A stretch of 64,000 bases of DNA from Malacoraja senta (Eukaryota), in NCBI GenBank assembly GCA_038087875.1, contig CM075977.1, positions 97,340,001 to 97,404,000 on the forward strand, read 5' to 3'. Position 1 is the first letter of the stretch. The number at the start of each line of letters is the position of its first letter. The translations under genes and the position numbers were made by a program. Of the stretch, positions 31,401 through 43,400 are shown in pieces. A model generated the notes under the pieces. The model saw only the letters and a program-made list of their open reading frames with translations, had not been told where the DNA came from and did not search any database.

Positions 31401-34400
31401 ATAATGGCAAAGGATACAAATAATGCTGAAATTTCACGGTATAAAACAAAATTAATTCAGAGAAAAATTGAGCAATTACTGATCTCGCACCATCCTCCAT
31501 CCCTCAAAAATAAAACACGAGTCGCTCAGATTGTAAAGCCATTCCAAACCAGGGAATTATCTGGAGTCAGCACCAGAGAGGATTCTAAAAGTGGTTAGTA
31601 ATTTCCCACCACAAGCCACATCTTCCCATCTCTACCCCTTTCCGCAGAGACCTCCGCAACTCCCTGGTTAACTCGTCCCTTCCCACCCAAACCACCCCTT
31701 CCCAGGTACTTTCCCCTGCAACCACAGGAGATGCAACACCTGTCCCTCTAGCTCCTCCCTTGACTCCATCCGAGGACCCCGTCTTTTCAGGTGAGGCAGT
31801 GGTTCATTTGAACCTCATCCATCTCATCTACTGTATCTGCAGTTGAGACCGAGCACAAGCTCGGCAATTGTGTCGCTGAACACCTCCGCTTAGTCCGTCT
31901 AAACCTACCTGATCTCCTGGTTGCTAAATTTGAACTCCACCTCCCATTCCTACACTGACCTTTCTGTCCTGGGCTTACTCCATTGTCGGAGTGTCTAACT
32001 TCAAGTAACCCTTGTTTTCCCTCACTCTCTATCCCTCCCCCTTCCCAGTTCTCCGACCAGTCTGACCGTCCCTGATTACATTTTATCTGTTTGATTTGTT
32101 GATACCTTCTCCTAGCTAACAATGACCTATTCTACATTTTCCTTGATCTCCACCCCCTTTGAAGTCTCATTTTCACACTTTATACTCTTATCTCTGTATC
32201 TCCCTCTCCTCTGACTGTCTCAAGAAGGGGCTCAACCCGAAACGTCACCCATTCCTTCCATCCTGCAATGATGCTCCAGCATTTTGTGTCTATCTTCAGT
32301 TTAAACCAACATCCGCTGTTCCTTCCTACACTTATAATTAACAGGTTCTTCAAGGCAGAGGAGAAATTATAATGGGAATAATGAACAGGAGAGATAGTAA
32401 GTAGATATTAATTACATCTTTATTATAAAACCCAAGGAAAAAATTCAAAAATGTAAAGAAAATAATAAAATTAATTTACATTGACTGAAACAGTCTTAGA
32501 AAAAAAGAATAATGCAAATTCGAAAAATCTCCCGGCATACGGACCTACATTTTATGGTTTCAAGAGAGGTTCTAATCCTCCAGAATTATGTAGGGCACAA
32601 AATAATCCATATACATTGAACTCCTGTTCAAAATAGATTTTCGTTAAGCGACAAAATTCAGGAGCAAAGATTGGAGTTGAAATAACTTCAGACATAATTT
32701 AATTGAATGGGAGAAAGCTTCTTTCAGAAGGCCCAATATTAAAGTCACTAGTAAATACTATATTTTAAAATGCTACATACCTTTCTTCCGAATTGTAAAG
32801 TCGAGCGAGCCCAAAATCAGCAAGTTTAATCTGTCCCCTGGTGGAAAAGAAGATTTTATTCAAAATTCGAATAATGTACATTTATTTGGCACAGTGACAC
32901 ATTTCAAAAGTAATTAAAATAAGCAGTAGGGAAAGTAAAAGAATGCTTTTCTTATATTTCTGACCTATTATCCTTCTTCTCACACTCCTGCATACATAAA
33001 TTCTTCATTATTTGGGCAGACAGACAGGGGGCATGTGTGCATTTCTAGCATTTTCTGCTTTTGTGAAGTAATTCCAGAAGATGCAACGTTTTATTTCTTT
33101 CTCACTAGCTACATTTTTGGACTGTGGATACATTCTATACAATAACCCCCCCGATGTAATAGACCCCTTTATATCTGATTTTGGTCATGTAGACGGACCT
33201 GCCGACTCAACCCCCAGCTCACACTGCCTCCCCAGCATCTTAAGGCCCTGGCTTCCGGCGCTGCCCACGGCTTGCAAGGTGCACCTGTGAGCAATTCTTC
33301 ACCCACCGTACGGTCCAGTTAACACAGCTGTTGCTGCGGCTCACATTGTAGCTCCTGGGGACAACACTTTATTCAGGCTGCTGCCAACAACAGGAAGCGC
33401 TCGGTCACCGGGGGGCTCCCTTCCCTCCTATCAGCTGCTGCTTCTTCCTGTCAGCCCATCTCTTGGTTCATCCCCACCACCTCCAACTCCTCCCGTCACT
33501 CTGTCCACTCCCTCTTCTACCCACTCTACTGTCATTGACCAGAGGCTACAACGTGAGCTGCAACAACAGCCGCTTCAACCGGACGGTGCTGCAGCCGGTG
33601 AAGAAGGGCTCACTGGTGCAGACCAACAGCATCGCCGCACGGTTTTAAGGTGAAACTGCACAAAGCTCTGGAGTAACTCAGCAGACTGTATCAGTCTGAA
33701 GGGTCCCAACATCACCTATCCATGTTCTCCAGGAATCCTGCCTGGCTCGCTGAGTTACTCTGCTTCCTTGTGTGTATTAACCAACATGTGCAATTGTATG
33801 TTTCAACTATATTCAATAATACTTTACTCAGTTATAGCAGATAACTGGAAAAAACAGACACCACAACAACCCCCCCCCCCCCCCCCCCCCACAATGTGGT
33901 TTATTACAACGAGGAGTTACTGTATTAGAGTTTAGTTTCTCAAATGGTGGTGGCAACGGCACCCATTATTTCTAATAATCAATCCAAGAACAGATGTCAC
34001 TCAAGGATGAATATTATGTGTTCTTAATTTGCGACTTACGTTTAGGATCACTCAATCATTGTCCCAATGTTAGTAAAGCATCCAATTACGTGAAAAATCA
34101 AAACCAATACTGGGAAGATTCTGGAATGTACCAAATTGTGGCATGCCATCTAGGAACTATTAAATAAGAACTACATTTCTGTACTTTCAATGTGTTTGGC
34201 ATGAGCCCCACAGCACTGCTTTCTGGAATACTATAACTTGCTTGATGTTCTCAGTTTTCAACACTGACAAAAAGGATTGATCATGCTGAACCAAGCTTCC
34301 TACCCAAATCATATACTGGATGATGGCAACAAGGTACAGGTGGCAACTGGGCCTCCAAATGGTCAGAGAAGCCCCTGCCAGATAGCTTCTCCCAAAAAGC

Positions 34401-40400: not shown

Positions 40401-43400
40401 AATAAATTAGAAATTGGGAGGGAAGAACAACAATGGAAAATACAGTCCCCAAGGCAATAGTACCAGGCAAATTGTTGACGCTGCTGGCTGACAAGTCTCG
40501 ATGGACCTCATCCTGGTCTCTTAAGTGGCTAATGAGATATTTGATGCATTAGTTTTAACTCTCAAGGTTCCCTAGAATAGGGAACTGTTTTATTAGACTG
40601 TAATATAGTAATGGCTACACCTTCATTCAAAGAGAGACAAAGCAGGGAAGCTAAGCTTAACATTTGTCGGAGGAAAATACACACGTCATTACAGATGCTG
40701 TAGCAGGGCAATTAAAAAAAACCTCAAGATTATCAGGCAAAGGCAATAGTTTTGTGAAAAGGTCAATTTATTGTTCTTCATGCCATTCAATCTGTTGTGG
40801 ATATCGGGAAATACAATAGATAGTTCAGCTACAACACAATAATTATGTACCTCAGAAACCTTGGGTGAAAGAAAATGATGTCACAGAATCAACTATGCCA
40901 ACGGGGAAAGAGGTGGTTTGGGGGCCAGAGGAGCTCGGATTCACAACAACAACATCTTCCTCCTCCCCCCCCCCCCCCCCCCCCCAGACCAAGCTGTGCA
41001 TTTGATTCTCTGTAACACGCTCCACACTTTGTTTCACGTCAACAGGATGCTCTTCACTTCTTGCAGGCCAATACATAATACAGGAAGGACATTTAAACCT
41101 ATGCTACATTCTACAATTTGCCTAATGCAGACTGGAATAGGCAGAAGATTGCAAGAGATTGCTTGCTCTTGATTAGGGAAAAAACCACAGGTTAAGATAC
41201 CAGTAGGTCCTGTCAGAGGAGAAAGCATAATTTGGATTGTGACATTTAAGGGTCACCTGAANNNNNNNNNNNNNNNNNNNNNNNNNNNNNNNNNNNNNNN
41301 NNNNNNNNNNNNNNNNNNNNNNNNNNNNNNNNNNNNNNNNNNNNNNNNNNNNNNNNNNNNNNNNNNNNNNNNNNNNNNNNNNNNNNNNNNNNNNNNNNNN
41401 NNNNNNNNNNNNNNNNNNNNNNNNNNNNNNNNNNNNNNNNNNNNNNNNNNNNNNNNNNNNNACTGGCTTATTTTGTGAAACTTTAGAAAGTGTGTTCATA
41501 TTAAGGAGAGAAGTAGGTTTAACATTTTAGGTTACTGATCAAATTTGTCTACACAACTTTCACCAGTCTTTCAACATATACTTTTCACTCACTGTCGAGG
41601 ACATCTAAAAATAAACAAATGAGCAACATTAATACAGCCTTATACCGATTACGCAAGGGACACCATACTACCAAAACTAGGTAACAAAGAACTGCAGATA
41701 CTGGCTAATACACAAAATGACACAAAGTGCTGCAGTAACTCAATAGGTCTGAATCAGTCTGAAGAAGAGGCCCAACTTGAAACATTCATATTCTCCAGAG
41801 ATGCTGCCGGATCTGTTGCGTTACTCCAGTGTCCTTTCACCTTAAAACTAAGTGTCGATGGCGCTGGTCTGCACCAACGAGCCATTCTTCACCAGTTTGT
41901 GCACCATCCGGTTGAAGCAACCGTTGTTGTGGCTCACGTTATAGCCCCTGGCTGTTAGCGCTTTCTTCAGGGAACAAGAGCGTGCTCCTTCCACTCAGGG
42001 GCTCACTCCACTCTCATCAGCTGCCGCTTTGGCCTCTCTCCCCTCCACCGCCGCTGCCTCCTCCTCCCATTGCTTTGTCCACTCCTCCGCCCGCCCCTCC
42101 ACTGCCTCCTCCACTTCATTCGCTGACACCTTCCACCTTAGAATATGTCGGTGACTCCAGAGGATGGGAGAAGCTGTGAGTGGATAAAGCAACGGGAGGG
42201 GAAAAACTGGGTGGAGGTGGAAATGGGAGGTGGTGGAGCAGACAAAGCGATGGCCAACAGGAAGAAGCAACAGCTGGTGAGAGGAGAGAGAGCCCATGGT
42301 TCTCTCTCCTCTCAGGAATCAGTAGAAACTGTTGGATCTTGCCGTGCACACTTGGAATTTATATAAAATTCTGGGAAGTATGCTGCAATGACATGAAGTT
42401 ACTGCTTTTTAAAAAATGTAACAACACTACTCATCACCATCAGTACCAACAATTTCTGACATAACTCTCAACTGAAAATAACAATGCAGCTAAAAAAAGG
42501 AATTTCAATCAGGTATCCCAGCCATGGAGGCAGGCAAGAGACCCAATTCATTCTTTGCTCCAGAAATAGGTTAGCTGCTTCAAAGGGATCGTTCAAAAGT
42601 CGGTGTTCAATGGGGCAGACAAATTTAGAAGTGATCAAAAAAAGTCACACATAACCGTCTTGCATTTGCAGCAACTTAATTGAAATGGTATGTCCAATTA
42701 AGCTTTGTCAAAACACATCTTAAGATGAAAGGATGGAAGGAGAACCTCGGTGATGGCTGTTCAAAGAATTTGCGGAAACCTATTGCCTGGGTCACATGTA
42801 AAGCTTTCCTCCTTCTTGTCAGCCAGGGACTGGGTGTTTTTCAGAATCACCGAGTTAAAATGAATTAAACTTCTTGAGAATAGACTAAATGCTGGAGTAA
42901 TTCAGCCAGACAGACAGCTTCTCTTCAGAGAATGAATGGGTGATGTTTCCGTTCTAAAAAGTCTAAACCCAAAATGTCACCCATTCCTTCTTGCTGCCTG
43001 TCACGCTGAGTCACTCCAGCACTTTGTGTCTATCTTCGGTGTAAACTAGCATCTGCAGTTCCTTCCCACACTTACTAAGGATTGCGAATAGAGATACTAA
43101 TTTCATTTTTACATAGAAAATAGGTGCAGGATTAGGCCATTCAGCCCTTCGAGCCAGCACCACATATGATAAAAGTCATGATGGTAGCCGGCAAAGCAGC
43201 TGACGAAGATTCAATGAGGAAGTGCTGGTGTAATGTCCTCGGGCATGATAAATGATCTCAAACAATCCGAGGCACTTGGACTGGCCAGAGCACAATCCAC
43301 GTTCGACGTTTCTACCGACACCACATTTCCTGTAGCTTCATGTCGGTAGAGGATAAATACTTATTTTAAAAGAACATAAATTTAAAAAATTGAAACAAAG

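What the first reader, a model, noticed from the sequence alone, without database searches (positions are those of the whole stretch)
33410..42300. A dispersed repeat family apparently built on a histone H1 globular domain
Seen: two loci about 8 kb apart (33410-33790 on +, 41690-42300 on -) share the same three-part architecture. Each has a pyrimidine-rich leader (ggctc...cagctg.tgcttcttcctgt...ccatc...ccaccacctcc), then an H1 winged-helix fragment (GYNVSxNNxxFNRxVxxxVKxGSLVQT) ending in the identical junction GTTTTAAGGTGAAA, then the ctggagtaac Penelope-type terminal repeat. A third, more decayed fragment lies at 33238-33420. Inference: three H1 pieces in one gene, two with a shared junction, argue against independent pseudogenes. 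They fit a chimeric non-autonomous retroelement that captured a divergent H1 (possibly a sperm or protamine-like H1) and was amplified by Penelope machinery. I know of no named family like this but cannot search.
Basis: partly seen in the sequence, partly recalled or inferred. Interest (0 to 1): 0.78.

Follow-up and report, generated by a model that had tools for sequence, protein, structure and literature searches.

The report
Skate transposon carrying histone H1 hairpin
The two look-alike loci are old, dead copies of a small cut-and-paste DNA transposon family of skates that once picked up a 460-base piece of a linker-histone (H1 variant) gene, folded it head-to-head, and spread it around the genome; it is a rare vertebrate case of gene-fragment capture, with no sign of present function.

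Summary
Both loci carry decayed histone H1 globular-domain sequence and the identical 14-mer GTTTTAAGGTGAAA, followed by a very common repeat.

The interpretation needs two corrections:
- **The 'pyrimidine-rich leader' and the 'third fragment' are antisense H1.** Each locus is a head-to-head H1 hairpin.
- **The unit is bounded by terminal inverted repeats, not by the Penelope-like repeat.** In locus A (33140-33922) the ends begin CAGTAA and are flanked by TA. Four independent copies stop at the same base. The Penelope-like repeat lies inside the element.

The H1 piece comes from an intronless, arginine-rich-tailed H1 variant of cartilaginous fishes. DNA identity to the Rhinoraja longicauda gene is 77-86%. 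The piece runs from a TATA-like box at -117 to codon 114. All arms share two deletions relative to the gene, so there was one capture.

The H1-to-repeat junction is constant in five independent loci from several sequencing runs. Locus B has an orthologous copy elsewhere (88% over 1 kb).

My best reading is a Pack-type, pogo/Tigger-like miniature DNA transposon (MITE). Amplification by Penelope machinery is not supported.

The assembly gap (41262-41461) lies outside both elements.

This scan found the same H1 hairpin on other DNA of this genome (s1-195535, s1-175078, s1-184370).

The parts
33140..33922 (+). Element A, complete copy (783 bp), flanked by TA at 33138-33139 and 33923-33924
   Evidence: The two ends are inverted repeats (I5; anchored alignment z 7.8). 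The left end stops at the same base as the ends in L003, L004 and L015. GC is 53% against 41% for the window.
33140..33172 (+). Left terminal inverted repeat of A (begins CAATAACC, decayed from CAGTAA..)
33240..33515 (-). L arm of A: H1 fragment in antisense.
   Evidence: Matches gene nt 219-305 and 135-186 on the minus strand. The translation [18 protein letters not shown] aligns with the other arms.
33539..33638 (+). R arm of A: H1 codons about 80-113 in sense
   Evidence: 86% identity to gene nt 239-338, E 4e-29. Weak Pfam Linker_histone hit, E 0.11.
33642..33655 (+). Constant junction 14-mer GTTTTAAGGTGAAA
33659..33810 (+). Internal copy of the common foldback repeat (REP, CTGGAGTAAC type): a short sense stub followed by the antisense arm
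33890..33922 (-). Right terminal inverted repeat of A (reads CAGTAACTCCTCG from outside in). It is preceded by a 25-nt poly-C run at 33866-33890.
41690..42404 (-). Element B: the left end is present and the right end was not found
   Evidence: The left end CAGTAACTTCAT resembles the L003 end (z 4.8). No terminus was detected between 40800 and 41700. The orthologous copy L001 is 88% identical over 1055 nt, flanks included.
42170..42295 (+).
   Evidence: Gene nt 73-118 in antisense. Inverted repeats against 42030-42100.
41848..42143 (-). R arm of B: H1 from about the start codon to codon 114, in sense, with stops and frameshifts
   Evidence: Gene nt 17-89 and 218-342, 81% identity. Pfam hit E 1e-3. 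PDB GH1 hit E 9e-5.
41835..41848 (-). Constant junction 14-mer GTTTTAAGGTGAAA
41690..41833 (-). Internal REP copy of B (sense arm followed by antisense arm)

Best explanation
Both loci are fossil copies of a non-autonomous cut-and-paste DNA transposon: a MITE of the Tc1/mariner-pogo (Tigger-like) kind, with TA target sites.

Internal region. Its internal region is a captured host-gene fragment, as in Pack-type elements. One ancestral element acquired about 460 bp of an intronless, arginine-rich-tailed H1 variant gene of cartilaginous fishes, from a TATA-like box at -117 to codon 114. The piece became duplicated head-to-head into an L arm (antisense) and an R arm (sense). The R arm is fused at a fixed point to a copy of a very abundant Penelope-like foldback repeat (REP).

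Amplification. The whole cassette [TIR][L arm][R arm][14-mer][REP][TIR] was then amplified in trans by a transposase that recognises the ends. The copies have since decayed neutrally, by about 20-30%.

Shown: H1 origin, single capture, hairpin architecture, constant junction, multi-locus and multi-run distribution, inverted ends with TA flanks.

Inferred: capture at the DNA level during gap repair or template switching, the identity of the transposase, and the absence of present function.
For: H1 origin. Pfam and PDB hits. 77-86% DNA identity to L012:4001-4729, the 'histone H1.5-like' gene of Rhinoraja longicauda.

Single capture. Every arm at every locus lacks the same 13 nt and about 34 nt of the gene.

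Hairpin. The leader is antisense H1. The RNA folds have z -4.6 and -6.1.

Same order of parts. L arm, R arm and REP occur in the same order in winA, L002, L010 and L015. Truncated forms occur in winB/L001 and L016.

Junction. It is constant in 5 independent loci.

Dispersal. A profile search of 1.8 billion proteins found at least 10 decayed copies read as ORFs, besides the real H1 variants. They lie on unrelated contigs from at least 6 sequencing runs.

Arms do not cluster by locus. Within-locus arms are 67-71% identical, no closer than arms from different loci. The hairpin therefore predates amplification.

Ends.
- The TIR pair of A has z 7.8.
- Four independent copies end at the same ..TACTG base, three of them followed by TA.
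- TA flanks 4 of 6 ends, against a background TA frequency of 6.4% (p 2e-4).

The H1 fragment starts at a TATA-like box, about 70 nt downstream of an AAACACA H1-box. It has no gene 3' end.
Against: - Only locus A shows both ends. Its TIRs are only about 70-77% alike.
- The right end of locus B was not found.
- The L-b subtype (L002, L010) continues into a different flank and end, so the cassette sits in more than one kind of element.
- No autonomous partner and no empty site were examined.
- The transcription start of the H1 gene is not known, so 'promoter included' is an inference.
- REP carries a Penelope-type ribozyme box, and Penelope-like insertions are known (from my own knowledge) for inverted partial copies. 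A retro step in forming the H1-REP fusion is therefore not excluded.
- Dfam and Repbase could not be searched.
Confidence: 0.7

Rival explanations
1. A chimeric non-autonomous retroelement: an H1 transcript was fused to a Penelope-like terminal repeat and amplified by Penelope reverse transcriptase. The inverted arms would arise from Penelope-style inverted 5'-truncated insertion.
For: - The H1-REP junction is constant.
- The best REP copies carry a CUGANGA..GAAA..GUC box of the minimal-hammerhead design described for Penelope-like elements (PMC4209133).
- REP itself is usually a foldback.
Against: - REP is internal in locus A. Another 112 nt, with a TIR and a TA flank, follow it.
- Four copies end at one fixed TIR base on the H1 side.
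- L and R arms are distinct, fixed types rather than locus-specific duplicates.
- The H1 piece begins at a TATA-like box and lacks the mRNA 3' end and poly(A).
- No Rfam hammerhead was found, even at E 10.
- No RT or GIY-YIG coding sequence lies at either locus.
Confidence: 0.12
2. A local inverted segmental duplication. One H1 pseudogene plus adjacent repeat was copied within the intron, with no mobile family involved.
For: There are two copies 8 kb apart, in opposite orientation, within one window.
Against: - A and B are no closer to each other (70-79%) than to copies on unrelated contigs of other runs.
- Their flanks are unrelated.
- B has its own orthologous copy with flanks.
- The same cassette occurs at five or more other loci.
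- Per earlier notes, it also occurs in three other windows of this genome.
Confidence: 0.03
3. The hairpins are maintained small-RNA (hairpin-RNA) genes that silence the H1 variant. The transposon ends would be incidental.
For: Long imperfect hairpins fold better than shuffled sequence. They lie in an intron, so they may be transcribed.
Against: - The arms have decayed independently. Within-locus arm identity is 67-71%, no better than between loci.
- The arms are truncated differently in each copy.
- Identity to the gene is only 77-86%.
- There are no small-RNA data.
Confidence: 0.05

Closest known systems
Pack-MULE / Pack-TYPE elements of plants (non-autonomous TIR transposons carrying captured gene fragments)
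   Same: A host-gene fragment sits between terminal inverted repeats and is amplified as a passenger. The fragment is internal and non-functional. Some Pack elements also hold inverted fragment pairs.
   Different: This one has a TA target and CAGT-type ends (Tc1/mariner-pogo style), not Mutator or CACTA ends. The host is a vertebrate, and the cassette also contains a retroelement-derived repeat.
Turmoil-1 of C. elegans (transduplication into inverted terminal repeats; PMC2572040)
   Same: An animal DNA transposon with captured coding sequence present in inverted orientation on both sides.
   Different: In Turmoil-1 the captured pieces lie within long ITRs of an autonomous-type element. Here a central head-to-head hairpin lies inside a 0.8-kb MITE.
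Tigger/pogo-derived MITEs of vertebrates
   Same: Size below 1 kb, TA flanks, termini starting CAGT.., no coding capacity.
   Different: Ordinary MITEs are internal-deletion derivatives of their autonomous element. This one has a foreign, gene-derived core.
Penelope-like elements and their minimal-hammerhead repeats (PMC4209133)
   Same: The REP part shows the minimal hammerhead box and a foldback arrangement.
   Different: REP is a passenger inside the element. No Penelope-type ends, ORF or target duplications define these loci.
Earlier notes of this scan on the same genome: s1-195535, s1-175078, s1-184370
   Same: They describe the same head-to-head H1 fragment pair inside TA-flanked or Tigger/pogo-type elements elsewhere in the genome.
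   Different: The present loci add the fixed fusion to REP, a complete copy with both ends, the source gene boundaries (-117 to +342) and the shared deletions.

Membership tests
Linker histone H1/H5 (Pfam PF00538): functional gene | Winged-helix globular domain scoring above the Pfam gathering cut-off | tested here: not met
   The best piece scores 19.8 bits against a 22.4-bit cut-off, E 1e-3. The other pieces score E 0.11 or nothing. The pieces are H1-derived, not H1 genes.
Linker histone H1/H5 (Pfam PF00538): functional gene | Intact open reading frame with N-terminal, globular and basic C-terminal parts | tested here: not met
   There are stops and frameshifts. All copies lack 13 nt and about 34 nt of the gene, including part of the globular domain. 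There is no C-terminal tail beyond codon 114.
H1-derived sequence (descent from the chondrichthyan R-rich H1 variant) | Significant DNA-level similarity to the gene | tested here: met
   77-86% identity over 100-126 nt, E down to 4e-29, in every copy.
Tc1/mariner-pogo type MITE | Terminal inverted repeats | tested here: met
   Locus A: 33140-33172 against 33890-33922, z 7.8 against shuffles. Not met for locus B, whose right end was not found.
Tc1/mariner-pogo type MITE | TA target-site duplication | tested here: met
   TA lies on both sides of A. It flanks 4 of 6 ends overall, p 2e-4. No empty site was available to prove duplication.
Tc1/mariner-pogo type MITE | Fixed terminus shared by independent copies | tested here: met
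   winA, L003, L004 and L015 all stop at ..TACTG, and homology ends there.
Tc1/mariner-pogo type MITE | Autonomous partner with matching TIRs and a DDE/DDD transposase | not tested
No genome-wide search was possible with these tools.
Pack-type (gene-fragment-carrying) transposon | Host gene fragment lying between the TIRs and amplified with them | tested here: met
Penelope-like retroelement / non-autonomous derivative | Hammerhead ribozyme in the terminal repeat | tested here: inconclusive
   No Rfam hammerhead at the gathering score or at E 10. A minimal-HHR-like box is present in 3 REP copies elsewhere in the window, with 0 expected. It is decayed in the REP copies of A and B.
Penelope-like retroelement / non-autonomous derivative | The repeat forms the end of the inserted unit | tested here: not met
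   In A, 112 nt with a TIR and a TA flank lie beyond REP.
Penelope-like retroelement / non-autonomous derivative | RT / GIY-YIG coding sequence or a demonstrable autonomous partner | not tested
   There is no such ORF in either locus. No genome-wide search was possible.

The most novel reading that the evidence does not exclude
The head-to-head H1 cassettes, spread through introns by a transposon, act (or once acted) as hairpin-RNA sources that give small RNAs against the arginine-rich, possibly germline, H1 variant. This would be a transposon-built RNAi regulator of a chromatin protein in a cartilaginous fish.
Probability: 0.04. Interest if true: 0.75.

Novelty: new variant of a known kind. 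Interest (0 to 1): 0.42.

Why it matters
Capture and amplification of host-gene fragments by cut-and-paste transposons is routine in plants but rarely documented in vertebrates. This is a clean, datable example in skates, and three things about it are useful:
- **Capture history.** It has a defined source gene, capture boundaries and shared deletions that prove a single capture.
- **Mosaic cargo.** It shows that a MITE can carry a mixture of gene DNA and a Penelope-derived repeat.
- **Annotation.** The copies generate spurious 'H1-like' ORFs and exonised fragments in automatic gene sets. Recognising the family helps annotation of elasmobranch genomes.

It also draws attention to an uncharacterised arginine-rich H1 variant family of cartilaginous fishes.

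No function of the copies is indicated.

Tried and rejected
- **Word-index protein search with the 48-aa H1 piece.** No candidate was found. This is uninformative because of the length and word limits.
- **The search of earlier findings by sequence.** Blank.
- **Rfam on the whole window and on 33100-43200 at E 10.** No hammerhead was found. Only chance-level miRNA-like hits on the hairpins appeared.
- **A 14-nt direct repeat ACAAYAACCCCCCC (33139/33863).** I considered it as a long, retro-type target duplication. I rejected it because the left copy belongs to the TIR shared with L003, L004 and L015.
- **A guessed right end for locus B (TA|CAGCC at 41635).** It has no statistical support.
- **BLAST of the TIRs against the window.** No further copies were found.
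- **Origin of the 13 nt TTTTAAGGTGAAA.** It could be H1 codons 113-117 or the REP 5' part. Both fit about equally, so this is unresolved.
- **Tree of the arms.** It is star-like, with weak support except for the L-a group.
- **Literature searches.** They found no description of this family.
- **Human sequence.** No contig met here looked human.
- **Spliced models.** None were needed, because the source gene is a single exon.
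Full report
**What is in the sequence**

Locus A (about 33140-33922, + strand) and locus B (about 42404-41690, read on the - strand) share three things:
- a 44-nt 'leader' block at 80% identity;
- a 117-nt coding-like block at 79%, or 147 nt at 77% by BLASTN, E 4e-26;
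- the exact 14-mer GTTTTAAGGTGAAA at 33642-33655 and 41835-41848, followed by CTGGAGTAAC.

The assembly gap at 41262-41461 lies about 230 nt beyond the last recognisable base of locus B and outside both loci. It affects only the estimated 8-kb spacing. I did not try to fill it.

**H1 origin**

The stop-free piece window:41851-41994:- hits Pfam Linker_histone at E 1e-3. That is 19.8 bits, just under the 22.4-bit cut-off. It also hits solved H1 globular domains, with chicken GH1 at E 9e-5 and human H1.1-H1.4 at about 3e-4.

A three-piece profile (A2) was searched against 1.8 billion representative proteins. It returned 29 hits at E < 1e-3, which fall into two classes.

Class 1 is real linker-histone variants of cartilaginous fishes:
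- Species named by the sources are Rhinoraja longicauda, Carcharodon, Hypanus, Hemitrygon, Callorhinchus and Pristiophorus.
- They share GPTVTERVLSVAA...GISLAALKKALSAKGYDVSRNN..VN.TV..LV..GSLV.TSGTGA.GSFRFNR.
- Their tails have as much arginine as lysine or more, unlike a canonical H1.

Class 2 is at least ten decayed fragments read as ORFs on short contigs from several sequencing runs.

The R. longicauda gene is a single exon (L012:4001-4729). At DNA level the window's arms match it at 86% (A, gene nt 239-338) and 81% (B, nt 218-342), both E 4e-29. The copies on other contigs match at 77-81%.

**The 'leader' and the 'third fragment' are antisense H1**

- In A, 33295-33427 matches gene nt 305-135 on the minus strand.
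- In B, 42232-42277 (window coordinates) matches gene nt 73-118 in antisense.
- Each locus is therefore a head-to-head pair: an L arm (antisense) followed by an R arm (sense).
- Both stretches fold as long imperfect hairpins, with z -4.6 and -6.1 against shuffles.
- In A the L arm is nearly complete and the R arm holds only codons about 80-113. In B the L arm is cut down to the N-terminal part and the R arm runs from about the start codon to codon 114.

**One capture, then amplification**

In the multiple alignment, every arm of every locus lacks the same 13 nt and about 34 nt of the gene. The larger deletion removes part of the globular domain and shifts the frame.

Some copies (L007; L002 in antisense) extend upstream to gene nt -104/-117. 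There, homology starts at a TATA-like GATATTAAAG box, about 70 nt downstream of an AAACACA H1-box. The captured piece is thus about -117 to +342. It is an internal fragment with probable promoter sequence and no 3' end, which favours capture at the DNA level. This is an inference, because the transcription start is not mapped.

Arms come in fixed types:
- R arms continue ..GGTGCAGACC.. into the 14-mer and then REP.
- L arms continue ..GGTGCACCTTGC.. into a different, shared sequence.

Within-locus arm identity (67-71%) is no higher than identity between loci. The hairpin therefore predates the spread of the family.

**Distribution and junction**

- The order L arm, R arm, 14-mer, REP recurs in winA, L002, L010/11 and L015. 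Truncated forms occur in winB/L001 and L016, and L007-9 has an R arm without an L arm.
- The 14-mer junction, with at most one change, followed by the REP start, is present in five independent loci.
- L001 is an orthologous copy of locus B, 88% identical over 1055 nt including the unique flanks. The insertion is therefore older than that species split.
- I could not look up the species of the sequencing runs.

**Ends**

Four independent copies (winA, L003, L004, L015) lose homology at the same base..TACTG, when read outward from the L arm. In three of them the next bases are TA.

In locus A the opposite end carries the inverted counterpart. Reading from outside in, the ends are CAATAACCCCCCCGATGTAATAGACC and CAGTAACTCCTCGTTGTAATAAACC (z 7.8). 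TA lies on both sides, at 33138-9 and 33923-4.

The left end of B (CAGTAACTTCAT.., 42404) resembles the L003 end (z 4.8). Its right end was not found, and the expected place lies before the gap.

TA flanks 4 of 6 ends, against a 6.4% background (p 2e-4).

CAGT-type termini, TA flanks, a size of 0.8 kb and the lack of coding capacity are the signature of Tc1/mariner-pogo (Tigger-like) MITEs. This assignment rests on established knowledge of that superfamily.

A second subtype (L-b: L002, L010) continues into a different shared flank.

**The adjoining repeat (REP)**

- REP has at least 20 arms in the window and usually forms a foldback.
- Three well-kept copies carry CTGAAGA..GGGTCTCGACCC..GAAACGTC, where none is expected by chance.
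- That box fits the minimal hammerhead design reported for Penelope-like elements (PMC4209133).
- Rfam finds no hammerhead at any threshold tried.
- 'Penelope-type' is therefore plausible for REP. In locus A, however, REP is internal: 112 nt, including the TIR, follow it. It is cargo, not the mobilising end.
- How H1 and REP became fused is open. It could be a nested insertion, template switching in gap repair, or an earlier retro-chimera.

**Verdict**

This is a dispersed, old, dead family of Pack-type MITEs carrying a linker-histone hairpin.
- The proposed mechanism, a Penelope-amplified retroelement, is not supported.
- A local duplication is excluded.
- A small-RNA function is unsupported.

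This scan met the same cassette in other windows of this genome (s1-195535, s1-175078, s1-184370). I used those notes as leads. I tested the shared claims (head-to-head H1, TA-flanked inverted ends, different carriers) on my own loci only. The host gene (a CDK13 intron, from note s1-140474) was not checked.

Novelty is moderate. Gene-fragment capture by TIR transposons is well known in plants and rare in vertebrates. I could not check Dfam or Repbase.

Noticed in passing
window 35359-35573 and 36760-36974: Two 215-nt inverted repeats, 96% complementary and 1186 nt apart. They contain a ..CAAAAGTATTCATCCCCC motif that I recall from Tc1-like fish transposons. This looks like a young DNA transposon with long TIRs.
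   Followed up: no
window 37306-37336, 55057-55087, 62406-62436 (all - strand): Well-preserved copies of the abundant foldback repeat carry a minimal-hammerhead-like box (CTGAAGA..GAAACGTC). Three matches were found where none is expected, yet no Rfam hammerhead model reports them.
   Followed up: partly
window 38298-38345 and 43114-43161: A 48-nt inverted pair, 94% complementary (..GGGCCGAATGGCCTACTCCTGC..). It is probably another common elasmobranch repeat family.
   Followed up: no
L012:4001-4729, and proteins P0003, P0006, P0011, P0012, P0017, P0021, P0027: An intronless H1 variant family seen here only in cartilaginous fishes. Conserved features are an MAE..DVG..GGGG head, GPTVTERVLSVAA, GSFRFNR and an arginine-rich tail ending ..RPVGRPRK. 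Sources annotate it only as 'H1.5-like', 'H1-like' or uncharacterised. An H1-box and a TATA-like box lie upstream of the skate gene.
   Followed up: partly
protein P0009 (206 aa): A predicted protein in which an H1-cassette fragment (..[27 protein letters not shown]..) sits between two Kunitz-like cysteine modules. The likely cause is a transposon copy in an intron being read through by a gene caller.
   Followed up: no
window 33866-33890 and 40947-40985: Long poly-C runs. The first (about 25 nt) lies inside element A, next to its right TIR. Their origin is unknown.
   Followed up: no
window 42278-42314: A perfect-looking 17-nt palindrome (94%, 3-nt loop) at the point where the L arm of locus B is cut off. 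It marks a secondary foldback or deletion breakpoint, and it is also present in the orthologous contig L001.
   Followed up: partly
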